From positions 62,001-126,000 of the IMG/VR virus record IMGVR_UViG_3300032323_001214: a stretch of 64,000 nt of DNA, one strand, 5' to 3'. Shown in pieces: positions 1,696-29,800 of the stretch. The notes beneath the pieces were generated by a model. The model was given only the letters and a program-made list of their open reading frames with translations. It made no database searches and was not told the origin of the DNA. Numbering within the stretch: the stretch's first letter is position 1; every line of letters begins with the position of its first letter. Made by a program: the position numbers and the translations under genes.

Positions 1696-1734
1696 ATCGG
1701 GTAAACACCCATTTCAAAGACATAAGGAAAAATC

Positions 1735-2565
1735 ATGGCAATTCAAAACAATCCGTTAAAGCAATATTTTCGCAGACCAGCAATATATCTGAAATTACCA
1801 AGTGGTGGTAAAAACTATCCTGAGGGAGTTATTGTTATGCCCGAAACCGGAGAACTCCCAGTTTATCCTATGACTGCTATCGATGAAATTACCTCAAAGA
1901 CACCGGACGGACTTTTTAATGGTTCAGCAGTAGCCGAAATTATTAGTAGCTGTATTCCTAATATTAAGGATCCTTGGCAACTAACCAGCGTGGATTTGGA
2001 TGCTGTACTAATAGCTATACGTTCAGCCGCAAATGGTAGTGAATTGGAAATAGAAACTGTATGTCCAGCTTGTACAGAAGATGCCAAGTATGGTTTAAAT
2101 TTAGTTGGTTTGTTAAGTACTATTAAATCTGGAGATTACGATACCGAATTAGCAGTTAACGATTTGTTAATTAAATTTAGACCACTGACCTTTAAAGAAA
2201 TGAATATTGTTAGTGTAAGTCAGTTTGAAATGCAAAGACAGTTTATTCAATTAAATGCATTGGAAGACAGTGACGAGAAGAACAAAAGAAGCAAAGAAGT
2301 ATTAAAAGCAATTACCGATACAACTATGCAAGCTCTTTCAAAATGCATAGTGTATATAAAGACTCCTACGGTCTTCGTTGATGAAAACGAATTTATACTT
2401 GATTTTATACAGAACTGTGATAAGACAATGTATGAACAAATCAGAGACCATAATGCATTATTAAAGCAACAATCCGAATCAAAACCCTTAAAAGTAAAGT
2501 GTATTCACTGCAACCATGAATACGAACAACCCTTTACTATGAACATATCTGATTTTTTCGTATAA
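1735..2565 (+). CDS. T4 gp26-like baseplate hub subunit / tail assembly chaperone
   Basis: NPLKQYFRRPAIYLKLPS, YPMTAIDE, DLDAVLIAIRSA, two CxxC pairs (CPAC, CIHC), C-terminal DFF; AAGGA RBS upstream. Confidence 0.75.
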   Translation: MAIQNNPLKQYFRRPAIYLKLPSGGKNYPEGVIVMPETGELPVYPMTAIDEITSKTPDGLFNGSAVAEIISSCIPNIKDPWQLTSVDLDAVLIAIRSAANGSELEIETVCPACTEDAKYGLNLVGLLSTIKSGDYDTELAVNDLLIKFRPLTFKEMNIVSVSQFEMQRQFIQLNALEDSDEKNKRSKEVLKAITDTTMQALSKCIVYIKTPTVFVDENEFILDFIQNCDKTMYEQIRDHNALLKQQSESKPLKVKCIHCNHEYEQPFTMNISDFFV

Positions 2566-2602
2566 GGCTTCTGCATTCTAGCCCTGAGGATGTACAGAAG
2601 CT
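2553..2602 (+). promoter_or_regulatory. Candidate -1 programmed ribosomal frameshift signal
   Basis: In-frame slippery heptamer T_TTT_TTC (2553-2559), 6-7 nt spacer, stem-loop GGCTTCTG-CATTCT...AGGATG-TA-CAGAAGCT (2566-2602); the -1 frame is open from 2553 to the stop at 2789. Confidence 0.65.
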
Positions 2603-2612
2603 GATAGAAGGT

Positions 2613-2789
2613 ATGGAGAAGGAATGTGCCAGCATAAAGAAAAACGCAATAAGTTTAAGCTGGTACATGAGGGGTGGAATCTCATATGAAGATATACTAA
2701 ACATGTCCTCCGAGGAAAGAGCACAGGTAGTAGAATTGGTTAATAGTAACTTAGAAACTACTAAGAAGTCAGGACAGCCATTCTTCTAA
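2613..2789 (+). CDS. gp51-like hub assembly catalyst, 58 aa (not in ORF track; possibly the frameshifted C-terminal extension of the upstream gene)
   Basis: MEKECASIKKNAISLSWYMRGGISYEDILNMSSEERAQVVELVNSNLETTKKSGQPFF; the S-x-x-[DE]-I-x-x-M-x-x-x-ER pattern is typical of gp51-like/tail chaperone C-terminal domains. Confidence 0.7.
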   Translation: MEKECASIKKNAISLSWYMRGGISYEDILNMSSEERAQVVELVNSNLETTKKSGQPFF

Positions 2790-2834
2790 CTATATCCATA
2801 GCTGTTCATTTATCACATCGGGTGTCACTTGTAG

Positions 2835-2879
2835 AGATGGGCTTGACGCCCATCTAAGAACTCACTTCGTTCGTTCTTA
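2835..2879. repeat. Two adjacent inverted repeats (hairpins)
   Basis: AGATGGGC-ttgac-GCCCATCT (2835-2855) and TAAGAAC-tc-AC-ttc-GT-tc-GTTCTTA (2855-2879), followed on + by a T-rich tract; terminator and/or DNA hairpin. Confidence 0.6.
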
Positions 2880-2929
2880 AGTTTTATTCTTTTAAATTCT
2901 TTTTTATTCTAATCTAATAGGAGTATACT

Positions 2930-3290
2930 TGCCGATTTGAAGCCATGGTAGTGCAAATTTTGCACTACCATTGGTAAGGGTTGTTTTGCACGACCGTCAT
3001 CCATTAGTTGTCTATCCTCATACAATTAGCTATTTCTGCTATCACATGCTACCGGTTACCCTGTAAAGTTTATAGGCTGTAGTGAAGTCTGTCAATTATC
3101 TTTCAATTGACGCTTCGGTAACGCACATTCTGTATCATCAAGACAAAGTAGATACAGACTTGTTGAAGGTTCGCTTTTGTCGATTGCCTTCTCGGTATTC
3201 CATATACATAAATGTATACGTTTACTCCAGATCCATCAGCTATCTTTCAAGCATCTTCAAGGAGGTCCTGCAGCCAGGACGACAAATTTT
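2930..3290 (-). ncRNA. Candidate large structured non-coding RNA, family unassigned
   Basis: Dense stems in an intergenic gap: 3265-3280, 3201-3220, 3129-3136/3151-3158, 3091-3097/3105-3111, 3055-3060/3117-3122, 2945-2956/2960-2971, long-range 3176-3182/3280-3286. A mismatch in the 3201-3220 stem is a G-U pair only on the minus strand. Confidence 0.55.
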
Positions 3291-3299
3291 TATTTTAAT

Positions 3300-3872
3300 T
3301 TATTGTAGTGGGGAACTATCGTAGATGCTAATATCTTGTATTGACTTGGTGTCAGGTGATTCAGTTGAGTATGTTTTTAATAGATTAACATTGTGTTTGA
3401 AGAAACTGTCAAATTCGAAAATCATCCAGTCTCCGTGTTTTTTGCTAGTGTAATATATAAAATTGTCAGAAATCCATGTAAGCTTGCTTTGAACACAAAC
3501 ATACTTCCCCTTACGATTGAACTTCATAAAAAGAAGATTTACATCATTGGTATCTGCTACATCCATAAGTTGATCTAGCCAAGCGTCTATTACTTTACAA
3601 TCCCCTGTAAGTAATAGATGAAACGGGAAGTCAGCATAAAATTTGCATTCCACGTTCATTTTACTGAAACTTTGTCCTGGTACAATATCACCTTTGAATG
3701 AACGTACTTGTCCTTCATGTAATACTGTTGTTCTATGCTGATTTTTACCGCCCACATAAGCGCCAGACCCCGGAGCGCGGATGAATGATTCACCGTACTT
3801 CTCTGATAGATATTTAGCGACTTCTCGCTCAAAACCGGAGCCTTTAGCTTTTTGTGGACTTGTCATAGACAT
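3300..3872 (-). CDS. Hjc-like PD-(D/E)xK Holliday junction resolvase
   Basis: KAKGSGFEREVA, GDIV, NVECK nuclease motifs; downstream of gp46/47. The true start may be the ATG at 3866. Confidence 0.75.
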   Translation of the reverse strand: MSMTSPQKAKGSGFEREVAKYLSEKYGESFIRAPGSGAYVGGKNQHRTTVLHEGQVRSFKGDIVPGQSFSKMNVECKFYADFPFHLLLTGDCKVIDAWLDQLMDVADTNDVNLLFMKFNRKGKYVCVQSKLTWISDNFIYYTSKKHGDWMIFEFDSFFKHNVNLLKTYSTESPDTKSIQDISIYDSSPLQ

Positions 3873-3873
3873 A

Positions 3874-3881
3874 TACTTATC
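3874..3881 (-). promoter_or_regulatory. Possible late promoter variant GATAAGTA
   Basis: One mismatch to the GATAAATA motif seen repeatedly in this window; immediately upstream of the resolvase start. Confidence 0.4.
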
Positions 3882-3903
3882 ATGTATTATTACAACCTAT
3901 AAT

Positions 3904-5976
3904 TTATTCTACGTCCACCGCAGTATTATAGCTTGTAAAGCCGTTTTCTTTCACAACTTTTAGAACATTTGGTACACGACCTGCTAGTTCTTCACGGTGT
4001 GAAACAAGCCAAATAGATTTTTGTCGTCTACGTGACATGTCTTTGAGAATTGCTAGACTGTTCTCAACACCCATTGTGTCAAGACCACTGTCAATCAATT
4101 CGTCAATGAATAGTGTGTTGATCGGACTGTATAATGATTCCCAAACGTCACGGAATGCAAAACTCAAGCCAAGAATCAATCGATTGCGTTCACCACGGCT
4201 CAAGTTATCAAAGTCAAGTTCACGACCCAGTTCTGTAATTTCAACCTGCAAATCATTCTTAAAGATAACTTGATGTGGTAAACCAATTTTGTCTAGGTAA
4301 TGTGTCAATCTTGCGTTTAGATAACTCAAGTTTTGGTCAATAATCTTCTTACGAACAAAACTATCTTTGCTAGTTAACAAATCTAATAAGAACTTTTGAT
4401 GTTCCATTGTACGTGTTAATTTATTGATAGCTTCAAAGTCAATTGCTTGTAGTGCTTGTGTTTCCATTTCAGACACTTGTTCTGCATATGGATCAGTTTC
4501 TTGTGACTTGTTATCAATCTGATTAAGAATGTTAGCAACTTCACTTGAATGTTTGATTGCTTCTGCTTCTGTGTCATAATGGGTAACAGGTTGCGGACCT
4601 AAAACTATAGGAGTCAATTCATTTAGTTGTTCACTAAATGGATTAGTTTCTTGCTTTTTATCTTCCCAAACTTTCTTCAAGTTAGCTACGTCACCACTGT
4701 GACGTATCGCCTCTGCCTCAGTTTTATACGATGGTTTAGGTTTAGGACCCAATTCTTTAATTAGTGCTTGATTATTTGCTAGTTGTTCTTCTAAATCGGC
4801 TAAATCAGCCTTAGCATTTTCAAGCAGTGTGGTCTTTTGTAATGTAACTTCTAAATGCTTGTCATCATAGAAATCTTGTCCACAAGCATAACACTTATGA
4901 TCCTCAAGTTCTTTAACTTCCCGAACCAATTTATCAATTAATTTTTTTTCTTTTGTGATACTTTTGGTTAGGGTATCAATTATTGTTGCGATAGATTTTT
5001 GTTCGGCATCGTCATGCATCCACTCTTTTAAATCACTCCATGCTTTAAGTTCAGCATCAATATCATATTCATTCTTAAGCAGGTAAGCAGTATGTGCAAC
5101 AGAAACATCACTGTCGTGTTTCTGTTGCCAAGCAGTAGAACGTGCAACCAATGCATTGTATGCATCTTGTGCTTCTTTCTGTTTATTCCAGATGTTTAAA
5201 TCTTTGTGCGCTTGTAGTTCTATGGAAATATCAATCTTGCTCAACTCATCATATTGAAGTGCCAAACTGATTAAATCATCATCATGTTTCTTCAACCACA
5301 ATGTTTGTCTGCGTTTTAGTGCATCAATCTGTTCTTTAACTCGCTTGTTAGCTTCTTCAATGGCTTTAACTCTGAATTCTTCACTCTGAATATCATCTTT
5401 GCTACGGCGAATCATTTCTTTAATGATTTCAGCCTTTTCACTCAACAGTGTGATGCCCATTAGTTGTTCAATGATATCCTTTTGTTCGTTGTTCTTTAGT
5501 GCAAGAAACGGTTCGCTATATGTGTTCAATACAACGATATGACGGAACATGTCAGGAGACATGTTGATAACTTTTTCGATTGCCGCCTGTGTTTCTTTAT
5601 TTTCACCTTGCTGATCTTCAGTAGCCTTCTCCTGAACATTATTTACGTAGAACTTAAGAATGTTTGGCTTACGACCGCGCTCAATTTTATAGCTAATACC
5701 ATTGACGTTGAACGTCAATGTAACAAGCATAGCCTTCCCATTAGTACGATTAACTAAATTATCTTTACGAATGTTATTAATGGGTGTACCAAATAGTGCA
5801 TAGGATAGTCCTTGAATAAGTGTTGTCTTACCCGTACCGTTTCTAGCACCATCACCACCTAAGTCTAAGTTCTCACCTAGAATAAGTGTTAAGTCTTTCT
5901 TGTCAAAGTCAACTGCTTGTGTTACTGCGCCGATGCTTAAAAAATTTCGTAAAGTTATGTTTTGGAGTGTTATCAT
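3904..5976 (-). CDS. gp46: Rad50/SbcC-like recombination ATPase (T4 gp46-like)
   Basis: NFLSIG start, Walker A GTGKTT, coiled coils with central zinc hook CYAC, signature LSRGE, Walker B FIDE, H-loop VSH. Confidence 0.93.
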   Translation of the reverse strand: MITLQNITLRNFLSIGAVTQAVDFDKKDLTLILGENLDLGGDGARNGTGKTTLIQGLSYALFGTPINNIRKDNLVNRTNGKAMLVTLTFNVNGISYKIERGRKPNILKFYVNNVQEKATEDQQGENKETQAAIEKVINMSPDMFRHIVVLNTYSEPFLALKNNEQKDIIEQLMGITLLSEKAEIIKEMIRRSKDDIQSEEFRVKAIEEANKRVKEQIDALKRRQTLWLKKHDDDLISLALQYDELSKIDISIELQAHKDLNIWNKQKEAQDAYNALVARSTAWQQKHDSDVSVAHTAYLLKNEYDIDAELKAWSDLKEWMHDDAEQKSIATIIDTLTKSITKEKKLIDKLVREVKELEDHKCYACGQDFYDDKHLEVTLQKTTLLENAKADLADLEEQLANNQALIKELGPKPKPSYKTEAEAIRHSGDVANLKKVWEDKKQETNPFSEQLNELTPIVLGPQPVTHYDTEAEAIKHSSEVANILNQIDNKSQETDPYAEQVSEMETQALQAIDFEAINKLTRTMEHQKFLLDLLTSKDSFVRKKIIDQNLSYLNARLTHYLDKIGLPHQVIFKNDLQVEITELGRELDFDNLSRGERNRLILGLSFAFRDVWESLYSPINTLFIDELIDSGLDTMGVENSLAILKDMSRRRQKSIWLVSHREELAGRVPNVLKVVKENGFTSYNTAVDVE

Positions 5977-6179
5977 TTTAATTTTCTAAAAAAACTATCT
6001 TTGGCTAATTTTTCTGCCTTCAATGTCTTTTCTATAATACTTTCTACTCTAAGTTTGACTCTAATCAATCTATGTGTTTCTCTTAAACTACCTATATATG
6101 GTTGTGTTTTTGATAGTTCAGATAACGCAATACCCAAGTGCTTGTTTATTTTTATAAGAGAATCTAATTCGTAGTTCAT
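5973..6179 (-). CDS. Hypothetical protein, 68 aa
   Basis: Fills the gap between gp47 and gp46 with 4-bp overlaps at both ends. Confidence 0.65.
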   Translation of the reverse strand: MNYELDSLIKINKHLGIALSELSKTQPYIGSLRETHRLIRVKLRVESIIEKTLKAEKLAKDSFFRKLK

Positions 6180-7189
6180 AGATTGTTGTAGATGTCCAAA
6201 AGAATCTTCTTATCAAAATTATTTGATTCAATTGCATTAATTTGGTCAATGATAATTTGATCTACACTTTCAAACTTTAGTCCGTCACTAGTTTGACCAT
6301 TTTCATTTGTTTCTACTTTCATAGGTATCAATGCCATTTCACGTAGTTTATGTTCTGGTATCCATGTCTCACGCAAGAAGTTTGCTTCTTCGTATGAGAT
6401 TTCAATGTCAAGATGTACTCTAACATGACTGTCAATCAATAGCAAGCCCTCAGGGTTTTCTAAAATGTCACTTAGTTTATGAACACGAAACACGGGTTGT
6501 CTAGGCCATGTATGAAAGACTGGTTCACTTCCCCATTCCAATATCATCATGCCACGTGCGTCATCACCCGCATCAGCATAGTTATGTGGGAATGCATTAC
6601 CGATATACCAAATGTTCTTACGTGCTTGACGTTTATGAAAATGACCACTGAATACTTTCTCAAACCCGGTCATATGGTCCTCGTTAATTTCACCGTGATC
6701 GGGCATCTCTACCATAGCATTCATATAAAAGCGTGGTAGTTCTAAATGACCAAATAAGTATTTGCCACCCATCTTCTGTAGTTTTTTGTAATCTTCTTGT
6801 ACAAGCCAGGGTGCAATAACCACATCTCCTTGACTGAAGAAGTCGTTGATGATTTTAACATTTGGTAAATGCTTACCCCACTCAACACTATGAACGTCCC
6901 GCTTATCACGATAATAAAGATCGTGATTGCCTGGTATAAAATACACAGTGTCAAAGTTAGCACTTAGTTTTTCTAATGCTTGTAAGCCAAACTGTAGTGT
7001 ATGAATGTTAATACTTGCACGATGGTGATTATAATCGCCCAAGAAGAAACATGTCTCACATCCCTCACTCTTTGCTTTTTTAATGAACCAATCTACGAAA
7101 TCAGCACAGTCTTGATTGTGTTGTAGGCTGTTAGACTTCAATCCAAAATGCACGTCGGTGAAAACCGCTGCCTTCTTAAATAAATTCAT
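6176..7189 (-). CDS. gp47: Mre11/SbcD-like recombination nuclease (T4 gp47-like)
   Basis: Metallophosphoesterase motifs TDVHFG, LGD, GNHD, GHLE, SGHFH. Confidence 0.93.
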   Translation of the reverse strand: MNLFKKAAVFTDVHFGLKSNSLQHNQDCADFVDWFIKKAKSEGCETCFFLGDYNHHRASINIHTLQFGLQALEKLSANFDTVYFIPGNHDLYYRDKRDVHSVEWGKHLPNVKIINDFFSQGDVVIAPWLVQEDYKKLQKMGGKYLFGHLELPRFYMNAMVEMPDHGEINEDHMTGFEKVFSGHFHKRQARKNIWYIGNAFPHNYADAGDDARGMMILEWGSEPVFHTWPRQPVFRVHKLSDILENPEGLLLIDSHVRVHLDIEISYEEANFLRETWIPEHKLREMALIPMKVETNENGQTSDGLKFESVDQIIIDQINAIESNNFDKKILLDIYNNL

Positions 7190-7947
7190 TCATTGTCCTT
7201 AAGTTTGTATCCATTATAAAATTCCCCGTTTTTTGATTTTTCTCGAATAGTACTCATCCACTGACCTGTTTGTCTTTGGAACTCACTGATACTAGTATAC
7301 ACTTCTACTTCCCCGGAGTCACGCAATAAGGTAACCTTCTTAGATGTTTTTTCAGCACCTTTTAATCCGTTCTGTATTCTATATTTTTTTGCGAGTTCTG
7401 GATTTTCTTTTTGCCATTGTTTTATTCCAGCACTATGTTTTTCTTTTGCTCCGGCTACTGAATCATAATATCCTTTTAAGGTAGTTGATCTGTTTTTACA
7501 GGCATCATCTGTGTGGCAGTGCCTAATCATTTCTTGTCGTTCTTCAAGAGTAGTACCCTCCCATTTTTTCTTGTTGAACAACCTCCATTTTTCACCTAAT
7601 GCTTCTCTAATAATTACTACTTCTTCATCAGTGAACATAGTTAAATCATTGTTCAATCCATCACCACCGGGTGTGCTATTAAGACCATTCTTATAAGAAT
7701 CGTATTGACTAATATACTTTATTTCTGCTAATGCGAGTTGAGATATAGAATCAAATCCAGAGTCAATTACTTCATATACACAATTGCTGGGTCCATATTG
7801 GTTAATAGCGTTGTGTAATTTTCCTTTAGGATCAGTGATTGATTCCTTGCAGTGTGTTTTCCAACGAGATTTTTTATACTCAGGTTTTGTGTCTAACCCA
7901 ATGTATACTTTCCCTAAAGGAACAACGGTGATTTTGTAAATGAACAT
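7186..7947 (-). CDS. Free-standing GIY-YIG (Seg-like) homing endonuclease
   Basis: FIYKIT...VYIG, RWKTH, conserved E and GLN motifs in the N-terminal ~100 aa; basic C-terminal DNA-binding-like region; inserted between the sigma factor and gp47. Confidence 0.8.
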   Translation of the reverse strand: MFIYKITVVPLGKVYIGLDTKPEYKKSRWKTHCKESITDPKGKLHNAINQYGPSNCVYEVIDSGFDSISQLALAEIKYISQYDSYKNGLNSTPGGDGLNNDLTMFTDEEVVIIREALGEKWRLFNKKKWEGTTLEERQEMIRHCHTDDACKNRSTTLKGYYDSVAGAKEKHSAGIKQWQKENPELAKKYRIQNGLKGAEKTSKKVTLLRDSGEVEVYTSISEFQRQTGQWMSTIREKSKNGEFYNGYKLKDNE

Positions 7948-8002: not shown

Positions 8003-8911
8003 TTATTCTTCGTACACAGTGGATACTGATGCACCTGCCCCTTGACGTGACCAACTTGGATTTAGTCCATTCATTTCTAAAATGTCATCTCTGATATTTT
8101 GATTTCGTTTTTCTGAATTAAGTACACGACAGAAGCTATTGGTTATAGCGGCTGTGTAATATGCGAATGGGTTTGCTGACTTGGCTTCATTGAATCGTAA
8201 CCCAACATATGTTAATTGTAAAATAGCACTATTACGCATTTCGTCATTGTATGTGTACCCACGCCAATTATACTTCATTGCATATTTTTCACACATCATA
8301 ATATACATACGGGCTAGTTTATTAGTTACTTGACCGTGATCTTTGCTGAACTCACCACTTTCTAAATCACCTTTCCAATGACTTTTCCCCACACAATAGA
8401 ATGTATTGTTACTGTCAATTTTATAATGTTGGAATGGTGGGAAGTTTACTTTGACATGAACCATATCATCCACTTCAGCTTTGGTAGTGATATCTTCTAA
8501 ATCTGCAAAAATTGCGTCTGGATCTTCTTCTTCAAAATCAAAAATATCTTTTGCTGTTTTTTTCTTAACTGTTTTGCGGGGCTGTTTTGGTGCAACCGGT
8601 ACATGATCCCAAGTCATTACTCGAAACACTAAATCTTTAACATCTATCGATTCCGAGCTAACTGCGTCTTTACTACCCTGTTCAAGACTCAAACGTAAAG
8701 CACGTGTTTCTTTTGCTTGCTGAATAGTTTCAGGTTTGAATGCATACTCTAAACTTTTTTCTATAGCTTCTTGCGGCATGTCTACAATGAAATCATATCT
8801 ATGATAGTCAGGTTGTGCAAAATGACAATATGAATTTTTGCTTTCGTGTATTTCTTTTAAAATGTCTTTATTATTTAGGTAATTGACAGGTTTTCTTGAT
8901 GGTAGGGACAT
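8003..8911 (-). CDS. gp55: Late-transcription sigma factor (T4 gp55-like)
   Basis: VNYLNNKDILKEI, NWRGYTYNDEM, RFNEAKSANPFAYYT motifs; upstream of gp47/gp46 as in T4-like phages; GGAG RBS. Confidence 0.85.
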   Translation of the reverse strand: MSLPSRKPVNYLNNKDILKEIHESKNSYCHFAQPDYHRYDFIVDMPQEAIEKSLEYAFKPETIQQAKETRALRLSLEQGSKDAVSSESIDVKDLVFRVMTWDHVPVAPKQPRKTVKKKTAKDIFDFEEEDPDAIFADLEDITTKAEVDDMVHVKVNFPPFQHYKIDSNNTFYCVGKSHWKGDLESGEFSKDHGQVTNKLARMYIMMCEKYAMKYNWRGYTYNDEMRNSAILQLTYVGLRFNEAKSANPFAYYTAAITNSFCRVLNSEKRNQNIRDDILEMNGLNPSWSRQGAGASVSTVYEE

Positions 8912-20834: not shown

Positions 20835-23800
20835 ATGGCCACAAGTACAAGAATTAGAACACTAAACTTTTTACCAGACATTTTCAAAACAACAACCAAT
20901 GCTCAGTTTTTAGCGGCTACATTGGATCAAATTGTTGACCAACCAAATACGGAACGTATTGAAGGTTATATTGGTAGTAAGTTTGGCTACGGCATAAATG
21001 CGAAAAACAAATATGTAATTGAACCAACTAAAACACGAACAGATTATCAACTAGATCCAGGTGTAGCTTTCTTAAAGAAAGATACAGGTATTGCACAAGA
21101 TTTTATCAGTTATCCTGGCATAATTGATGCATTGAAGCTTGAAGGTGGTATCACAAACAATAATGATAGATTGTTTGAAAGCCAAATCTATTCATGGGAT
21201 AGCTTCACTGACTTAGATAAAATAATTAACTTCAATCAATATTATTGGTTACCAGAAGGTCCTGATCCAGTAACAATTTCTACCGACATTGTTTTCAATG
21301 CATCTGATTATATTATTACTGATGCCCCAAATGGTTACAACGTAACTGCTGATGGACAAGCACAGGGTTCTACAAATCCTACGCTAACGTTATTGCGTGG
21401 CGGAACATATAGATTTAGTGTCAACCAAGATAGTCAATTTTGGATTCAAGGCGCCCCGGGCGTTACTGGCTTAGACCCCACACAAACAAACGTTCAAACA
21501 CGTGATGTATTTGGTGTTTCTAATAACGGTGAGGAAGTAGGTATAGTGACATTTACTGTTCCAGCAAAAGATGCACTAGATGAATATAATTTTCCAGGAA
21601 ATAACATAGTTGATGTAGTATCCACTACTCCGTACGACCAAATTAACGGACAACTACTAAGTACTGTTGGAAATATTGATGGTATTAGTTCACTAAATGG
21701 CCTTACTGTAATGTTTTACAATACAGGTGTACCCAATGAACAAGGTTATATAAGTAATTTCTTTGATGAAACTAACTTTGACGTAAACAGTAATTTGGTA
21801 CCGGCACAAACAATTACTATTAGCTCCACTAATTCTACTGGAAATGTAATAACATGTTCTTCTACTGCTAACTTAGTAGTGGGACAAACTATAACATTTT
21901 CTGGATCTACTTTTGGTGGAATACTAGTATACGATGCCGTATTTCCAAATACAATATATTATGTAAATTCTATCATTAGCCCCACTGAATTTACTATTGC
22001 ACAACAATTATTTGATGTTGGTGTAACCCCTTTCAGTGTATCGACTGCTAGTGGTTCAGGTTTAATCGCTAACATTAATCAAGGCTTAAATGAAGAAGGT
22101 TATTACACTGATGTAACCGCAACATTTTACCGTATAACTTATGCGGGTAGCGTGAGTGATCCAGTATTAAGATTAGTAGAAGTTGGACCTATTCCTACTA
22201 ATCAAAAAATTACTGCACAATATGGTACTGCTTGGATCGCTAGAAATTTTTATAGAAACGTTGCGGGAACAATTAATTTAGTTCCATATAACAGTGCAAT
22301 ATTAGATGTGTTATATTATCAAGATGGTACTTCCGGTAATAAGGTTGGTCAATTACGTATAATTAATAGCAACACTACTAATCGTATTGATGTAGTAGAA
22401 GATATATTAGGTAAAAAACAATATACAGCACCAAACGGTGTACAATTTACCAATGGCTTAAAAGTGGTATTTCAAGGTGACATCTATCCTGTAAGCTACG
22501 AGAATGTTCAATATTATGTTGAAGGTGTAGGTACTGCCATTCAATTAATACCGGTATCAGATTTAATAGCACCTGAACCGTTTACCTCAAGCACATATAT
22601 ACCATATGATACTTTACCTTATGATATTGGTAACTATGACAGTAACTTATATATACCAGTAACTCCAGATTACATTACTATCGCTAGAAACAGTATTAAT
22701 AAAAATCCATGGTCACGTAGCAATCGTTGGTTCCATATTGATGTTATCACTGCTACTGCTACATACAATAATAACCCAAATTTTGTAACTATAGCAGCCA
22801 CACAAGAAAATAAAGCAAAACGACCAATCATTGAATTCTATCCTAACTTAAGATTATTCAACTCAGGATATTTAGGTAAAGCTCCAATTGACTTTATTGA
22901 TTTTAGAACAACTGATGCGTTTGAATACGTTGCGGGTCAAGAAAATTATTACCCGGACGTTGAAGTATATACTGCATACACAGCTACAATTAATAGCGCA
23001 GTTTCAAGCACGACTACTACAATCTCATTATCTACGTCAGATATTGTTGGTACATTTCAAGTTGGTCAATATATAAATGACACAACTAATTTGTTGCCAA
23101 CTAATGCACAAATTAGTAATATCAGTGTTGCATCTGGCATCACTACACTGACAGTCACTTGGTTAGGCAATTACACATTTGGTAGCACTACTGTAGCTTC
23201 ATTGATTGCTAACGATGGTCAGAATGATAACTATGCATTATTTGATGGTGCCAGAATTGTTTTTGCCGCAGACACAAATGAAAATGTAAAAGACAAAATA
23301 TATGTGGTAAGATTTTCTTCAATCACACCACTATCAACTCCTGTGATTACTCTTACCCCAGCAGATGACGGTGAAGTTCTTCCATTAGAACAAACTGTTG
23401 CATTTAGAGGATTTAATTATAAGGGTAAAGATTTCTACTTTGATAGTATTGATTGGTTAGAATCACAACAAAAAACAACAGTTAATCAACCTCCGTTGTT
23501 TGATATCTTCGATGAAAATGGTATAAGCTTATCAAATAGTGAGTACTATGTTGGTACATCTTTTAAGGGTAATAAATTATTTTCATATGGATTGGGATCA
23601 GGATTAGATGATTCCATCTTAGGCTTCCCAATACGATATAGTTCAATAGACAACGTAGGTGATATTAGTTTTGATGTATCACTTAACGCAGACACATTCA
23701 ATTATGTTAGAGGGACTACGCCCATAACTCAAAGAGTTAACACAGGATATGTTTATAACTACACCGTTTTAGGTGAACAGTATAGACAAATTGGTTGGGA

Positions 23801-26800
23801 AACTGCAGTGGGCAGTAGTGTTCAGTATCAACTATTTGAATTTAATTACTTTGCAAGTTCACCTACAACCACATACACATGTGACGTATCAATGCTTAGT
23901 CCCGATGCATCAGCATGGCCTACCTTGCAAGTATATGTGAATAACGTACTACAAACAGGAACATACACAGTAACTGTTGGACCAAATAGTACCGTTATTA
24001 ATCTTGAAGTACCTGATCCATTAGTAGATACAGTAGTGCAAGTATCAATTTTGAGTAATCAAGTAAGTAAAATTGGATATTATTCTGTACCTATTAACTT
24101 GAATAATAACCCATTGAACCAAGATATAGTTGTAGCAAACGTAGGTGATATTCGTGGTCAATATCAAAGTATCTTCTACAATAACCCTGACATTACCGGT
24201 GTTGTATTTGGTGCTAACAATTATCGTGACTTGGGCAATCTTGTTCCATGGGGCAATCGAATTATACAGAACAGCGCAAGCTTAGTATTGCCTGGCACGT
24301 TCCTTCGCAAACAAAATCACAATCTATTCAATGCGTTAATGTTTAACAGCAAAGAATATATTAATTTCAAAACATTGTTAGTTGGCACAGTTAACAACAC
24401 TGACTATAGCCGACACTATCCTCCTGCATATATGCTAGACGATGCACTGGATCAAATAACAGCTAGTAAAACAGAAGATGAATCATTCTTCTGGAGCGAT
24501 ATGTTACCGAATAAAGCAGCCTATATTACTAACACATATAGTTTTGCAAATAGTTTGGACGTATCGATATATCCATTGAGTAAGGTTTATAACTATGATA
24601 CCGCAAATTACAATGGTATTTTAGTATACTTAACAAGAACAACCAGTGGCGTAACAACGACCACTCAATTGATAAAAGGAATCGACTACACCGTAAGTTC
24701 AACTAGTCCTGCATTAACAGTTGAAACTGACTTGTTGCCCGGTGATCAGATTACTATCAATGAGTATAATCAAACATATGGTAGTTACTGCCCCAATACA
24801 CCCACTAAGTTAGGTCTATATCCAAGCACAATTCCTCAAGTTATACTAGATAGTAACTATGTAACACCTACCTATTTTATAGTAGGACATGATGGATCAT
24901 ACAACAAATTGTATGGTGATTATATCGATGGACAATTGATTGATTTTAGAGATCAAGTATTGTTAGAATTTGAAAAACGTGTCTACAATAACTTAAAATT
25001 AAGTAATGTTATTCCTATTAATGAATCGGATGTTATACCTGGGTTTTGGAGAACAACTGACTACAGTTTAGATGAAATAAAACAGATATATTCTATAAAC
25101 TTTTTAAACTGGGTAGGACAGAATCGTGTTAATTACAAAAAACAAGTTTACAATGCAAATAATCAATACACTTACAACTACAATCGTAGCGGTAACAAAA
25201 TAAACAGAGATCCAATTCCACAAGGTTATTGGAGAGGTATATATGAATACTTCTATGACACAAGTAATCCTGATACTAAACCATGGGAAATGTTAGGTTT
25301 TGCAAATCAACCAACATGGTGGGCATCGAGATACGGATCAGCACCCTATACAAGTGATAACTTAGTATTGTGGGGGGATTTAGCTGCCGGTTATATTTGG
25401 AATGACGGCGTGCCATACGTCAATGAAGCATATGTAAGACCTGAATTGTTACAAGTGTTGCCGGTCGATACTGCAGGTAATTTGGTATCACCGTTTATAG
25501 CAATCGTAGGTAATTACTATAACCAATCATTTGTGAGAGATTGGGCTGTAGGAGATGTTGGTCCAACAGAATTTAGCTATCGTAGAAGTAGCACATGGCC
25601 ATTTGATCTAATGAAGATGTATGCGTTAACTAAACCTGCAGAGTTTTTTAACTTAGGGGTTGACATTGACAACTACAAATACAATGCAGAATTTAATCAA
25701 TATCTGGTTAACGACAGAAGCCACTTAGTAATTAGTGATGTAGAAATATATGGTAATGGTACTCCTAAAACAAGTTACATAAATTGGATTGTTGACTACG
25801 AGAAACAATTAGGGGTTGACGCAACAAAGAATATTACTGAACTACTAGATAACTTGGATGTAAGGTTAGTGTATCGTTTGGCTGGATTCTCTGACAAGAG
25901 TTTATTAAAGTTCTACGTTGAAAAGGGAACACCTAATAGCAATAACGCATCATTATTGATTCCTGATGAAAGCTTTGGTGTATTATTATATGACAATCAA
26001 CCATTCGAACGTATCGTTTACAGTGGGGTGATAGTTCAAAGCACGCCTGAGGGTTATTTCAAAGTATATGGTAACTCACAAACTAATGCATATTTTACTA
26101 TATCGAATCCTAAAATAAATGGTAACTATGACAGAATTACTTTGCAGAATTTGTCTGTACAAGTACCTAAAGATTATTATGATACTACCACTATAGTATC
26201 ATATGGAACCGAATTTTACTCATTACAAGAAGTTGCAGTATTTTTAAGTTCATATGGTAGATACTTGTCTACTCAGGGCGTATTGTTTGATCAAATCGAA
26301 ACTGGTCTAGAAGTTTCATGGAATCAAATGGTTGCTGAATTCTTATATTGGGCACAGAGTGGATGGGAACCGGGAAGTCTTATCAATTTAAATCCGGCAG
26401 CTAGTTTGATTTCTATAAACAAAGACAGCTATATTGTTCAACCATTAACACTACAACAACAAAACTTTATTCTAAATCAAAACTTATATCCAATACAATC
26501 CGTTGATATGTCAATTGTGCGTGATGGTACGTTGTTTACAGCACAACCTTTAAATCAAGGTGACACTGTTGCGTATGGACAATTTAACATCAGTAATTTT
26601 GAACATGGTATTGTATTTGATAATGTAACATTATTTGATGATATCATTTATAATTTGATAACAGGTTTGCGCCAACAACGAATTATTGTTCGTGGTACTA
26701 AAACTGCTGAGTGGAACGGTACTATTGATGCTCAAGGTTTTATTCTTAACCAAGACAATATTATTGAGTGGAATAATGAGACAAAGTATACCACTGGTTC

Positions 26801-29800
26801 TATTGTCAAATACAAAAATAAGTATTGGATAGCAGTAAAGATAATACAAGCTAGTGAAGTATTCGATGAACGTGATTGGAAAGAAACAGATTATAATGAA
26901 ATACAAAAAGGTCTATTACCAAACTCAAGTACACGTAGCTATGAGAGCACATTGTATTATGATGTAAACAAGGCCAACCTAGAAAATGATGCTGACTTGT
27001 TAAGCTTCAGTTTAATTGGATATCGCCCACGTGATTATTTGGCTCTTGTTGACCTAACTGACATTACACAGATTAATGTATATAAAAACTTTATTAAGAA
27101 TAAAGGTACATTGAATGCAGTATCTGCATTTAAAGGCGCAAACTTACCACAGGGTGGTATTGATTATGAAGTATACGAGAACTGGGCAATTAAAGCAGGT
27201 GAATTTGGAGGTGTATTAAACAGTAACTTTGTAGAGTTTAAGTTAAACCAATCTGAATTAACTGGTAACCCATCTACTGTAGAATTAACTAACGGGGCGT
27301 ACACTCAAGGAATACAACAACAAGTTCCGTTGTATAACATTTTCAATTACGGTAGACCAATAAATTCTCCTAATGTATTACCCACACTACCAATAGATAC
27401 TCCTAATGTATTGTTTCCAGACGCAGGCTACGTAAGTTTTGAAGATGTCAAAACGTATGCATACTATTACTTTGGATTGACTGGTGCTGAAACACCTATA
27501 ACAAGACTATATCAAGGTGATTATGTTTGGATCGCTAACTTACAAGGTACATGGCAGATCATGTCACCATTATCTTTGGGTACCGTAATAGAAGCAAGAA
27601 ATCTAGCAAATGGTACTATTACTCTACGATTTGCAACAGCACACGCATTAACAAAGTATTCAGCATTTGCAGTAACTAACTTTGATAATAGAGTCAATGG
27701 ATACTATACTGTTCAAAATGTCATTGATCCGTTTACTGTATTAGTTTCTGCTAATTTGAATCCATCAGTGCAAACCATTACAGGTCAAGGTATTGGCTTT
27801 AAGTTCCAATCACATCGTGCTCAAGAACCTAGCGACATTATCAATTTACCATTGCTTAACAACGAATTTGTAAAAAACAAAGTATGGGTCGATCTTGGCA
27901 ACGAAGGTAGCTGGCAAGTTTATCGTAAGAGTTTGAACTACACATATAGTAATGAAATTGTAAAAGCTAATTCACAATCATTTGGTAGTGCAGTAGCATA
28001 TACTGACAATATTGGTTATTTAATTGCTGATGCAGATGCCGGCGTAATGTACCGATATATCTATAATGCATTGACCGAACAGTATGAGCTATTCCAAACA
28101 TATACCGGATCTGCGTCTTTTGGTACAACTATAAGTTATGCAGGTGATACGTTTGTCGTATCACAACCTACAGGATCAACCGCAAGTGATAGAACTATCA
28201 ATATCTATCAACTGGTATCTACTACGTTGACTGATAGGCTTGAATTAATTCAAGAACCAATTCAAGCACCATCAAGTTCTATAACAAATTGGGGAAGTGC
28301 AACTGCAATTTCCGGAGATCAAAATTGGTTATATGTTTCTGACACTGTGAATAACAGAGTATATGTATATCGTAAATCACAAGTAACTGGAAAATATGAA
28401 TATGTAAACATTATATCAATCACAGGAGTTGGCGGTCTAGATCAATTTGGATATTCATTATCCACAGATTACTATGGATATACTTTAGTAATCGGCACAC
28501 CAGATCAAAACTATAGTTCAACGATTGACAATTCTGGCTACAGCTACATCTTTGATAGACTATATCAGAACTTTGAAGCACAATCTTCAAGTCAACCGTT
28601 CATCCCGTTGTTGTTTAATTTAGCAGTTAATACCAATACTACTACATATAATGCCAGTGCAACTACAGCAGGATCTAACAAAATAAATGTAGATACACTA
28701 CAAGGGTTGACTGTGGGTACTCCATCAGTATTCACTGGTCCTGTGTTTGGTGATATTTCATTGAACACTGTGTATTATATACGTGATACCTTTTCTCCTG
28801 CTAATCAAGTAACACTATCAACTAACAAGTATACAGAAACAGTTGATAATACATATGCAACAGGCAATAAAATTCGTGTAAGTAGTAATTCAGACTTTGT
28901 AGTAAACGCACCAATTGTGTTTTACGGTGAGACAGGTACTTCCAACATTGTATCTGGTACAAAATACTATATAAAATCAATTACAACAGTAACGATTGAC
29001 ACTATTAACTATGATGCTATCACAATATCTACAACGATAGGTGGCTCTACATTTACTGTTTCAAATAGTGACTTGAATGTAACAGCAGTAACATTTGGCA
29101 ATGAAGTAACATTGTCTTCTGATACAGGTACAATGACACTAAATGCACAAACACAACCTGTGTCAGTGTCTGTAAATGGTACAACTATTTCTGAAGATCA
29201 GTATGCAGTAATAGGCAATGTATTAAACATGTACGGTAATATAACAGCCGGTGACATTATTACATTAGATAGTTCAACATTTGTACTGATGCAAACATTA
29301 TCTACGGGAACTACCCCTAGAGTAGGTACACAATTTGGTCAAAGCGTTGCTGTTAATAAATATGCATCAGAAGTTTTAGTTGGTGCACCCTTCCAAATAA
29401 GTGAGACTGCAGGTGAAGGTGCAGTCTATCGATTTACTAACGGTGGCGGCAAATATGGTATGATTACCGGTACCGTCGATTGTAATTTAACATCAAGTGA
29501 AACAATTTTAATTAATGGTTTTGTAGTAACATTGCCTATAGGTGGTGCAACAGGCGCAGCTAATGCTATTAATAAAGCAAACATTACAAACGTTCAGGCC
29601 GCAAATGTTGATGACAAATTAGTAATCAGTCTAGTCAACACATCACTTGCGACCATCAATGACAAGTTAAACATAGCCGCACTAAGTCCCACAGCATATA
29701 CTGGCATGGGTATTGCTCCATATACATTGACACAAACAATTACATGTCCTCATGTTGGTGGTGCTACACAATTTGGTGAAAAAATAAAATTTAATGAGTT

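What the first reader, a model, noticed from the sequence alone, without database searches (positions are those of the whole stretch)
2930..3290. Unassigned ~360-nt multi-stem, possibly pseudoknotted ncRNA downstream of the resolvase
Seen: this is the only large gene-free gap in an otherwise densely coding window, and it is full of stems: GTCCTG/CAGGAC (3265-3280), 3201-3220, TCTGTATC/GATACAGA, GTCAATT/AATTGAC nested in GAAG/CTTC and GTTACC/GGTAAC, and a 12-bp stem at 2945-2971. The pairing TTTGTCG(3176-3182)/CGACAAA(3280-3286) crosses GAAGG(3165-3169)/CCTTC(3187-3191), which would be a pseudoknot. I see no tRNA, tmRNA or RNase P hallmarks. Inference: a large phage ncRNA in the style of GOLLD/ROOL-type RNAs, a ribozyme, or a replication-primer RNA, probably on the minus strand.
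Basis: partly seen in the sequence, partly recalled or inferred. Interest (0 to 1): 0.8.

Follow-up and report, generated by a model that had tools for sequence, protein, structure and literature searches.

The report
New large structured RNA in jumbo phages
The gene-free gap holds a real, strongly conserved, pseudoknotted non-coding RNA of about 500 nucleotides on the minus strand; it matches no catalogued RNA family, its function is unknown, and probable distant relatives sit unannotated, several per genome, in cultured E. coli, Klebsiella and Salmonella jumbo phages, where it could be tested.

Summary
Window 2790-3299 is the only large gene-free gap and lies between two converging genes: a gp26-like baseplate hub gene with its -1 frame extension, and a PD-(D/E)XK resolvase.

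- **Conservation:** The same gap, 478-536 nt long, occurs in more than 100 related IMG/VR phage loci, 79 of them distinct, and is conserved end to end.
- **Structure:** On 73 sequences, 127 base pairs are 96% canonical and 81 show compensatory double changes. Controls with the partner column slid give 35-41%.
- **Strand:** G.U counts, a closing helix and a tandem-G.A hairpin all point to the minus strand.
- **Known families:** Rfam 15, ARAGORN and phage BLAST give no match.
- **Wider family:** More distant phages keep an H-type pseudoknot core with the near-invariant word ACAGAGCAACC at the same position. These include the cultured Rak2-like jumbo phages 121Q, PBECO4, GAP32 and RaK2, which carry 4-5 unannotated copies. 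In the 12 copies aligned, each has its own TGnTATAAT promoter and most have an intrinsic terminator.

Function is unknown. My best guess is a stable, trans-acting folded RNA. It is a new family of the GOLLD/ROOL kind, large phage RNAs of unknown function.

The parts
2796..3295 (-). Whole conserved ncRNA unit: core, linker and domain B, about 500 nt
   Evidence: An nhmmer profile of alignment A1 matches window 3296-2793. The same unit is intact in all relatives, including those with a homing endonuclease gene inserted beside it.
2929..3285 (-). Core domain of about 356 nt, closed by helix P1 (3285-3281 with 2929-2933)
   Evidence: P1 shows U.G alternating with C-G and U-A. On the plus strand these pairs would be C.A mismatches.
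3265..3280 (-). P2 hairpin
   Evidence: Three or four Watson-Crick pair types per position, for example 3270:3275 and 3269:3276.
3225..3264 (-). P3 domain: invariant CUCC (3264-3261) pairs with GGAG (3228-3225) and encloses a variable hairpin
   Evidence: Columns C36-A43 of A1 are invariant.
3201..3220 (-). P4 hairpin
   Evidence: Eight pairs, most with compensatory changes.
3050..3197 (-). Central multi-helix domain: junction stem 3197-3193/3054-3050 enclosing P5 (3191-3165), P6 (3163-3125) and P7 (3122-3055, with P7a 3116-3113/3087-3084 and P7b 3111-3105/3097-3091)
   Evidence: Covariance model R1 and alignment A3: 99.6% of cells paired against 86.3% in shuffles (0 of 500 reach it), and 21 of 29 pairs changed on both sides. 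Slid controls give 29-38%.
3019..3048 (-). P8 hairpin
   Evidence: Ten pairs with many G.U pairs in the minus sense (A.C in the plus sense) and double changes.
3015..3077 (-). Pseudoknot PK1: 3077-3074 pairs with 3018-3015 (consensus UCCC/GGGA; CCU/AGG in the window)
   Evidence: Mutual-information (MI/APC) hit. All four column pairs are at least 89% canonical and carry C-G to U-A exchanges. It corresponds to stem S2 of the H-type pseudoknot in distant relatives.
3008..3146 (-). Pseudoknot PK2: P6 loop 3146-3141 (UUGUCU) pairs with 3013-3008 (AGACAA)
   Evidence: The consensus is UUAUCU/AGAUAA. Column pairs show UA/CG, UA/UG/CG, AU/GC and CG/UA.
2943..2974 (-). P9, a 12-bp hairpin carrying the invariant 14-mer GCACUACCAUGGCU
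   Evidence: Nearly invariant stem. The loop-closing pair alternates U-A and A-U, 38 against 34.
2890..2928 (-). Variable A-rich linker
   Evidence: Poorly conserved columns in A1.
2796..2889 (-). Domain B: closing stem 2889-2884/2801-2796, hairpin B1 2878-2856 (tandem G.A plus a GAA loop), hairpin B2 2855-2835, and the conserved GAUAAAUGAAYAG at 2815-2803
   Evidence: Covariation in B1 and B2. The tandem-G.A hairpin recurs in all distant relatives. In the plus sense, B1 followed by a T-rich run probably also terminates the hub operon.
3300..3872 (-). Upstream gene on the RNA strand: PD-(D/E)XK (PDDEXK_15) resolvase-like protein. Its stop codon lies 3-15 nt from the RNA.
   Evidence: Pfam PF24608, E = 4e-26; PHROG 244. 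A sigma70-like promoter, GTGAAA-18-TATAAT, lies at 3954-3925.
1735..2789 (+). Converging gene: gp26-like baseplate hub (1735-2565) with a -1 frame extension to 2789
   Evidence: Pfam PF12322 and PHROG 150. The slippery heptamer at 2553-2559 is conserved in 51 of 52 relatives.

Best explanation
**What it is (shown).** The gap encodes a genuine non-coding RNA gene on the minus strand that matches no family in Rfam 15. It has three parts:
- a compact core of about 356 nt (3285-2929), closed by helix P1, with nine helices and two pseudoknots;
- an A-rich linker;
- a 3' three-way domain (2889-2796) containing a tandem-G.A hairpin.

**How it is made (inferred).** It is transcribed in the early/middle direction. 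Either it forms the 3' part of the resolvase transcript, starting from the sigma70-like promoter at 3954-3925, or it starts from a weak promoter at the end of the resolvase gene. In cultured relatives the probable homologues are separate genes, each of the 12 copies aligned having its own TGnTATAAT promoter and most an intrinsic terminator.

**How it works (inferred).** It most likely acts in trans as a folded RNA, by binding a protein or complex (scaffold or decoy) or by assembling with itself. Antisense pairing looks less likely, because selection preserves helices, junctions and pseudoknots and I saw no long accessible seed.
For: - **Conservation:** The gap keeps a length of 478-536 nt in 79 distinct relatives whose hub proteins are only 50-64% identical, and it is conserved along its whole length.
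- **Covariation:** RNAalifold on 34 sequences gives 83 pairs, 56 of them compensatory. On 73 sequences, 127 pairs are 96.1% canonical and 81 change on both sides, against 35-41% and 23-36 when the partner is slid. For the central domain, 0 of 500 shuffles reach the observed values.
- **Pseudoknots:** Two were found by mutual information.
- **Strand:** On pairs predicted on both strands, G.U pairs number 222 in the minus sense against 78 in the plus sense. P1 and the tandem-G.A hairpin form only in the minus sense.
- **Unit behaviour:** The RNA stays whole when homing endonuclease genes insert beside it.
- **RNA libraries:** Contigs from four metatranscriptomes cover 2851-3295 and 3015-3267, while gp26 is uncovered in three of the four.
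- **Cultured relatives:** Rak2-like phages have unannotated copies with promoter and terminator in the same orientation. They share an H-type pseudoknot that covaries.
Against: - No direct, stranded evidence of a discrete transcript for this phage. The runs were chosen because they hold this sequence, the contigs are unstranded, and DNA carry-over is possible.
- No conserved -35/-10 promoter pair was found directly upstream, so the 5' end is unknown.
- No clear intrinsic terminator was found on the minus strand in the window itself.
- Neither nhmmer nor covariance model R1 links the window family to the Rak2-like copies. That homology rests on position, a shared 11-13-nt word and matching pseudoknot topology.
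- Nothing identifies a binding partner. The trans-acting mode is inference only.
Confidence: 0.55

Rival explanations
1. It is a cis-acting transcript-end element at a converging gene junction. A large structured 3' UTR would stabilise the resolvase operon mRNA against 3' exonucleases and, with domain B, act as a bidirectional terminator or insulator between early/middle and late transcription.
For: - The RNA starts 3-15 nt after the upstream stop codon, with no conserved promoter.
- It always sits where opposing transcription units meet, in distant relatives too.
- In the plus sense, hairpin B1 is followed by a T-rich run. In many relatives, in the minus sense, B2 is followed by UUU.
Against: - About 356 nt of pseudoknotted core with dozens of invariant junction nucleotides is far more than a terminator or stabiliser needs.
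- In Rak2-like phages the probable homologues have their own promoters. Copy A has no upstream gene on its strand, and other copies lie inside co-directional operons.
Confidence: 0.15
2. It is a ribozyme, either self-cleaving or self-processing or acting on another RNA.
For: It has a compact fold with a closing helix, a multi-helix junction, two pseudoknots and many invariant unpaired nucleotides. Its size is in the range of known large ribozymes.
Against: - No match to any Rfam ribozyme, group I or II intron or RNase P model, even at E up to 10.
- It interrupts no gene: the upstream Pfam domain is complete.
- No activity can be tested here.
Confidence: 0.1
3. It is an RNA that self-assembles into a homo- or hetero-oligomer, as GOLLD, ROOL and OLE do. 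Part of what looks like intramolecular pseudoknots would then be intermolecular kissing contacts.
For: - It is a large phage-borne RNA of unknown function.
- PK2 is a six-base-pair contact between a hairpin loop and a single strand. Covariation cannot tell whether it forms within one molecule or between two.
- Rak2-like phages keep 4-5 paralogues.
- Cryo-EM structures of GOLLD, ROOL and OLE oligomers are published (PMC12286853, seen).
Against: No sequence or model similarity to GOLLD, ROOL or OLE. No tRNA genes in the window, although I recall that such RNAs often lie beside tRNA genes. No structural data exist.
Confidence: 0.12
4. It is a DNA-level or primer element: a replication origin whose single-stranded hairpins, or a structured primer RNA of the ColE1 RNA II type, start DNA synthesis.
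For: - Both strands fold equally well.
- G.T wobble pairs are tolerated in DNA too.
- The GCGAAGC-type mini-hairpin is known from phage origins (from my own memory).
- The element lies next to recombination and replication genes.
Against: - Pseudoknots, tandem G.A pairs and a 2.8:1 strand bias in wobble pairs fit RNA better.
- Having 4-5 copies, each with promoter and terminator, in Rak2-like phages does not suggest origins.
- There is no change in GC skew at the site.
Confidence: 0.06
5. It is not a functional element, only a hairpin-rich spacer or a decayed gene.
For: None beyond the lack of a known function.
Against: It is conserved end to end with compensatory changes across more than 100 loci. 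All six frames are full of stop codons.
Confidence: 0.01

Closest known systems
GOLLD and ROOL (large ornate phage- or prophage-associated RNAs; Rfam families)
   Same: A large (several hundred nt), multi-helix, pseudoknotted ncRNA carried by phages, found by comparative analysis of environmental sequence, including freshwater. Its function is unknown.
   Different: No covariance-model match at gathering score or at E up to 10. No tRNA gene in the window. The architecture and conserved words differ. It is smaller than GOLLD. Oligomerisation is untested.
Unannotated multi-copy intergenic elements of Rak2-like jumbo phages (121Q, PBECO4, GAP32, CBB, RaK2, Serratia BF)
   Same: - Copy A occupies the same position, between a resolvase gene and the hub gene plus its small ORF, on the strand opposite the hub gene.
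- It shares an H-type pseudoknot with the word ACAGAGCAACC and the covarying stem GUUGC/GCAAC.
- It has a tandem-G.A hairpin near the 3' end and is similar in size.

   Different: - The sequences cannot be aligned by nhmmer or by model R1.
- There are 4-5 copies per genome, each of the 12 aligned with its own TGnTATAAT promoter.
- Only one copy was seen in the window and in the related contigs that were scanned.
PA5oct 'putative lncRNA' ncRNA001-004 (PMC7318152)
   Same: Intergenic RNAs of 236-619 nt without ORFs in a related jumbo phage, defined by directional RNA-seq. They show that such phages do transcribe large ncRNAs.
   Different: nhmmer finds no similarity. ncRNA004 is not next to the hub gene. 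Any relationship is unproven.
phi29 pRNA
   Same: A phage-encoded structured RNA that works as a folded molecule in a protein machine and uses covarying loop-loop contacts. It is an analogy for the proposed mode of action.
   Different: pRNA is about 174 nt, unrelated in sequence, and belongs to a different phage group. No link to DNA packaging is shown here.
Group I introns of T4-like phages
   Same: Similar size, pseudoknotted, found in T4-related phages, and often accompanied by homing endonuclease genes.
   Different: It interrupts no gene, has no exon context and gives no Intron_gpI match. The homing endonuclease genes lie beside the RNA, not inside it.

Membership tests
GOLLD / ROOL / OLE / raiA (Rfam large ornate RNAs) | Match to the family covariance model | tested here: not met
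   cmscan of the whole window at gathering score found 0 matches. The region 2500-3600 at E up to 10 gave only four chance snoRNA or miRNA hits.
GOLLD / ROOL | Frequent adjacency to tRNA genes in phages or prophages | tested here: not met
   ARAGORN finds no tRNA or tmRNA gene in the 64 kb. That these RNAs often lie beside tRNA genes is from my own memory.
GOLLD / ROOL / OLE | Homo-oligomeric assembly | not testable with these tools
   Needs native gels or cryo-EM. PK2 could form within one molecule or between molecules.
Group I intron | Interrupts a host gene, with flanking exons | tested here: not met
   The upstream ORF covers the PDDEXK_15 profile at positions 2-157 of 164. No ORF continues downstream on that strand.
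Group I intron | Match to Intron_gpI (P3-P9 core) | tested here: not met
   No hit at E up to 10.
RNase P RNA / tmRNA / 6S / SRP | Match to a family model or an ARAGORN call | tested here: not met
   The same holds for the Rak2-like and PA5oct loci.
IscB/TnpB omega RNA, bridge RNA, retron ncRNA | Adjacent gene for the partner protein (IscB, TnpB, IS110 recombinase or reverse transcriptase) | tested here: not met
   The neighbours are a PD-(D/E)XK resolvase, Rad50/Mre11-like proteins and the hub protein. The neighbours vary among relatives.
Conserved structured ncRNA (generic criteria) | Conservation together with compensatory base changes above controls | tested here: met
Same family as the Rak2-like intergenic copies | Statistically significant similarity in sequence or model | tested here: not met
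   nhmmer in both directions, and model R1, find nothing.
Same family as the Rak2-like intergenic copies | Same genomic position, shared core word and the same pseudoknot topology with covariation | tested here: met
   By my own estimate, an exact 11-mer in an 836-nt gap is expected by chance about 4e-4 times.
Intrinsic terminator only | A stem plus U-run accounts for the whole conserved element | tested here: not met
   The terminator scan finds none in the gap. Terminator-like hairpins B1 and B2 cover about 45 of the roughly 500 conserved nt.

The most novel reading that the evidence does not exclude
This would be the founding member of a new class of large functional RNA used by jumbo phages with T4-type cores: either a ribozyme or a self-assembling RNA machine. 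It would be made from early sigma70-type promoters, be kept in up to 4-5 paralogous copies per genome in Rak2-like phages, and be needed for infection, for example to counter a host defence or to remodel host RNA metabolism.
Probability: 0.15. Interest if true: 0.92.

Novelty: new member of a known kind. Interest (0 to 1): 0.78.

Why it matters
**Why the class matters.** Large, intricately folded bacterial and phage RNAs are rare (GOLLD, ROOL, OLE, HEARO, raiA). Each has so far led to unexpected biology, such as RNA nanocages and RNA-guided nucleases.

**What this one offers.**
- It is conserved in hundreds of environmental jumbo-phage contigs.
- It has two covarying pseudoknots.
- It is absent from Rfam 15.

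**Why it is testable.** Probable relatives lie unannotated, or mis-annotated as tiny hypothetical ORFs, in cultured phages of E. coli, Klebsiella, Salmonella, Cronobacter, Erwinia and Serratia. Each of the 12 copies I aligned has a clear promoter, and most have a terminator. The function can therefore be tested directly by genetics, RNA-seq and cryo-EM.

**A practical consequence.** The work also flags annotation errors: several GenBank records call short ORFs across the element.

Tried and rejected
**Known families and near relatives**
- Rfam at gathering score and at E up to 10, and ARAGORN: nothing.
- blastn of 1700-4000 against 50,697 phage records: no match.

**Alternative readings of the sequence**
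- Protein coding, recoded stop codons or a split gene: all six frames are full of all three stop codons, and the flanking domains are complete.

**Collection scans that gave little**
- The 14-mer scan of genome contigs returned 120 loci, all chance. None carries the RNA. This was a poor use of that scan.
- The motif scan of viral contigs for the Rak2-type core returned about half chance hits, including one conserved protein gene recognised by its codon-position pattern. The true hits were only Rak2-like contigs and the contig of L121.
- The scan for a second copy of the window-type RNA in one contig found none.

**Links to other RNAs**
- Covariance model R1 and nhmmer against distant hub loci, 121Q and Atu_ph07: no hits.
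- Atu_ph07 appears to have real ORFs at this position.
- PA5oct ncRNA004 as a homologue: no statistical support and a different context.
- A paired protein partner: the genes beside the four 121Q-type copies are unrelated (HNH endonuclease, sigma factor, unknown proteins).
- Group I intron: the lead was an 11-nt word recalled from the T4 td intron. I did not verify it and set it aside, because neither the exon-context test nor the model test is met.

**Literature**
- No description of this RNA was found.
- Short pieces may be among the 8,495 unnamed candidate RNAs, about 67 nt on average, of PMC10690425. I did not check this.

Full report
**Setting.** The window comes from a 249.6-kb IMG/VR contig. 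The genes around the finding, are:

| Coordinates | Strand | Gene |
|---|---|---|
| 1-1659 | - | long ORF with no family match (tape-measure-like by eye), runs off the window |
| 1735-2565 | + | gp26-like baseplate hub gene (Pfam T4_baseplate) |
| to 2789 | + | 76-aa continuation of the hub gene in the -1 frame |
| 3300-3872 | - | PD-(D/E)XK resolvase-like gene |
| 3904-7189 | - | Rad50/Mre11-like genes (gp46/gp47 type) |
| 7186-7947 | - | GIY-YIG homing endonuclease gene |
| 8003-8911 | - | gp55-like late sigma factor gene |

So 2790-3299 is a 510-nt gap between converging genes. It is the only large stretch of the window without an ORF. All six frames there are full of stop codons of all three kinds.

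**Checking the observation.** The sequence folds much better than shuffled copies on both strands (z = -4.3 and -4.1). Rfam 15 gives no match at the curated thresholds for the whole window. With permissive filters at E up to 10 it gives only chance hits for the region. ARAGORN finds no tRNA or tmRNA. blastn against 50,697 phage records finds nothing.

**Relatives.** Searches of IMG/VR with the two flanking proteins returned 149 loci.
- In 110 loci the hub extension and the resolvase converge as they do here.
- The 79 distinct gaps are nearly all 478-536 nt long, although the hub proteins are only 50-64% identical.
- A MAFFT alignment of 73 gaps is conserved from about 2797 to 3292, with long invariant blocks.
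- A later motif scan added 37 more members, all in the same context and one per contig.
- In a few relatives the gap is about 1085 nt. There, a GIY-YIG homing endonuclease gene has been inserted between the hub extension and the RNA, and the whole RNA unit stays intact next to the resolvase.

**Structure.**
- RNAalifold on 34 non-redundant sequences gives 83 pairs, 56 with compensatory double changes.
- On 73 sequences, my curated set of 127 pairs is 96.1% canonical, and 81 pairs change on both sides. Sliding the partner column by 1-3 positions gives 35-41% canonical and 23-36 such pairs.
- For the central domain I built a covariance model and used the formal counter. It gives 99.6% of cells paired against 86.3% in shuffles, and 21 of 29 pairs compensatory against 13.0. 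In both cases 0 of 500 shuffles reach the observed value. Slid controls give 29-38%.
- *Architecture in the minus sense.* P1 (3285-3281 with 2929-2933) closes a core of about 356 nt. That core holds P2, the P3 domain, P4, a junction stem enclosing P5, P6 and P7 (with P7a and P7b), then P8 and P9. A variable A-rich linker follows. Last comes a 3' three-way domain (2889-2796) with a tandem-G.A hairpin (B1) and a second hairpin (B2).

**Pseudoknots.** Mutual-information analysis found two long-range helices that cross the nested structure.
- *PK1:* 3077-3074 pairs with 3018-3015. The consensus is UCCC/GGGA, and the window has CCU/AGG.
- *PK2:* the P6 loop 3146-3141 pairs with 3013-3008. The window has UUGUCU/AGACAA, and the consensus is UUAUCU/AGAUAA.
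This fits the data somewhat less well than P1 does. The P5 loop and the 3' strand carry almost the same sequence, so an alternative conformer cannot be excluded.

**Strand.**
- The consensus folding energy is -209 on the minus strand and -186 on the plus strand.
- On the 114 pairs predicted on both strands, G.U pairs number 222 in the minus sense and 78 in the plus sense.
- P1 contains U.G pairs that would be C.A on the plus strand.
- B1 has tandem G.A pairs that would be pyrimidine mismatches on the plus strand.
- In cultured relatives, promoter and terminator lie on the corresponding strand.
- G.T wobble pairs are also tolerated in single-stranded DNA, so this argument alone does not exclude a DNA structure.

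**Expression.** Only one read-laying run was allowed. Contigs from four metatranscriptomic libraries cover 2851-3295 (a 534-nt contig) and 3015-3267, with 3-26 differences. The hub gene is uncovered in three of the four runs. This is weak support, because the runs were chosen for holding this sequence, the contigs carry no strand, and DNA carry-over is possible.

**Ends of the RNA.**
- The RNA begins 3-15 nt after the resolvase stop codon.
- An A-rich block (consensus WATAAAAAT) is conserved just 5' of P1, but no -35 element is.
- A sigma70-like promoter lies upstream of the resolvase at 3954-3925. Co-transcription followed by processing is therefore plausible.
- The 3' end is not defined.

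**A wider family.** Loci whose hub proteins are only 32-48% identical also have a conserved non-coding gap beside the hub gene and its extension. The gene on the far side varies: radical SAM enzyme, segE-like endonuclease or endolysin. These gaps cannot be aligned to the window family by nhmmer or by model R1. They nevertheless keep the following, in the same order:
- a stem GUUGC/GCAAC that covaries (GUCGU/ACGAC, GUUGU/ACAAC);
- a second stem interleaved with it, which makes an H-type pseudoknot and corresponds to PK1;
- the loop word UACAG.RCAACCG;
- a hairpin preceded by AACAACCUUU;
- the tandem-G.A hairpin;
- a final hairpin followed by a U-run.

**Cultured relatives.** The nearest cultured phages by hub protein are the Rak2-like jumbo phages, at about 32% identity.
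- In 121Q an unannotated 836-nt gap follows the hub gene and a 69-aa ORF. It contains the same core word and pseudoknot.
- blastn with that gap finds 71 phage records with 4-5 places each.
- In one complete genome the four copies lie at 90, 143, 223 and 333 kb, all on one strand.
- An alignment of 12 copies from 9 phages shows that every copy has an invariant TGnTATAAT with a TGGAAC-like element 17 nt upstream. Most have an intrinsic terminator about 480 nt downstream. Both pseudoknot stems covary.
- In GAP32, CBB, 7t3 and EJP2, copy A lies between endonuclease VII (diverging) and the small ORF plus hub gene (converging). It is therefore a stand-alone gene.
- Several GenBank records call tiny hypothetical ORFs across it.
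- Rfam has no match for these copies either.
- I rate homology between the window family and the Rak2-like copies as probable, about 0.65, but not proven.

**Literature.**
- I found no description of this RNA.
- PA5oct, a related jumbo phage, has four 'putative lncRNAs' defined by RNA-seq (PMC7318152). None is demonstrably related.
- A 2023 survey predicted 8,495 short candidate RNAs in IMG/VR (PMC10690425). Fragments of this element may be among them unnamed.

**Interpretation.**
- *Shown:* a conserved, pseudoknotted RNA-type structure that reads best on the minus strand and belongs to no catalogued family.
- *Inferred:* it is transcribed in the early/middle direction and works as a folded RNA in trans.
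- *Rivals:* a cis-acting transcript-end element, a ribozyme, a self-assembling RNA, and an origin or primer element. None can be excluded without experiments.

Noticed in passing
window 2553-2789 (+), with 1735-2565: The gp26-like hub gene ends two codons after a slippery T_TTT_TTC, and a conserved 76-aa ORF continues in the -1 frame. In 51 of 52 distinct relatives the context is (G/A)AT TTT TTC GNN TRA, and the extension is always in the -1 frame. The part before the first ATG of the extension is conserved too. This is a candidate programmed -1 frameshift in a baseplate hub gene. In 121Q the homologue is annotated as a separate 69-aa ORF.
   Followed up: partly
L278:23094-23870, L276:43392-43947, L275:40002-40482, L280:33217-33665 (Escherichia phage EC22.5-2); L271:4538-5373 (121Q): Four paralogous unannotated elements of about 500 nt per genome in Rak2-like jumbo phages. 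In the 12 copies aligned, each has an extended -10 promoter and most have an intrinsic terminator. Some GenBank records place short hypothetical ORFs on them.
   Followed up: partly
L069, L067, L078, L024, L063 (gaps of about 1085 nt); L278:22061-23032; L124:5428-5958; L121:6509-6961; window 7186-7947: Homing endonuclease genes (GIY-YIG, HNH, segE-like) repeatedly sit directly beside the RNA gene in different lineages. That fits the RNA gene being a conserved landing site.
   Followed up: partly
window 2803-2815 (-): The conserved GAUAAAUGAAYAG inside domain B resembles the NTAAATA(C) words upstream of late genes in this window, which are likely late promoters. A similar UUAAAUGAAUA occurs in the 121Q-type copies. 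If it were a late promoter it would drive antisense transcription across the hub extension.
   Followed up: no
window 2935 and 2993: Two unpaired positions covary as identical letters (G with G in 39 sequences, U with U in 29). This could be a base triple, a shared third partner or simply phylogeny.
   Followed up: no
window 20835-40097 (+): A single ORF of 6,420 aa. I did not examine it.
   Followed up: no
window 3300-3872 compared with L271:5374-5865 and L283:1-285: The gene next to the RNA is a PD-(D/E)XK resolvase here and an endonuclease VII, in the opposite orientation, in Rak2-like phages. Two differently annotated junction-resolving enzymes thus hold the same position beside the RNA.
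   Followed up: no
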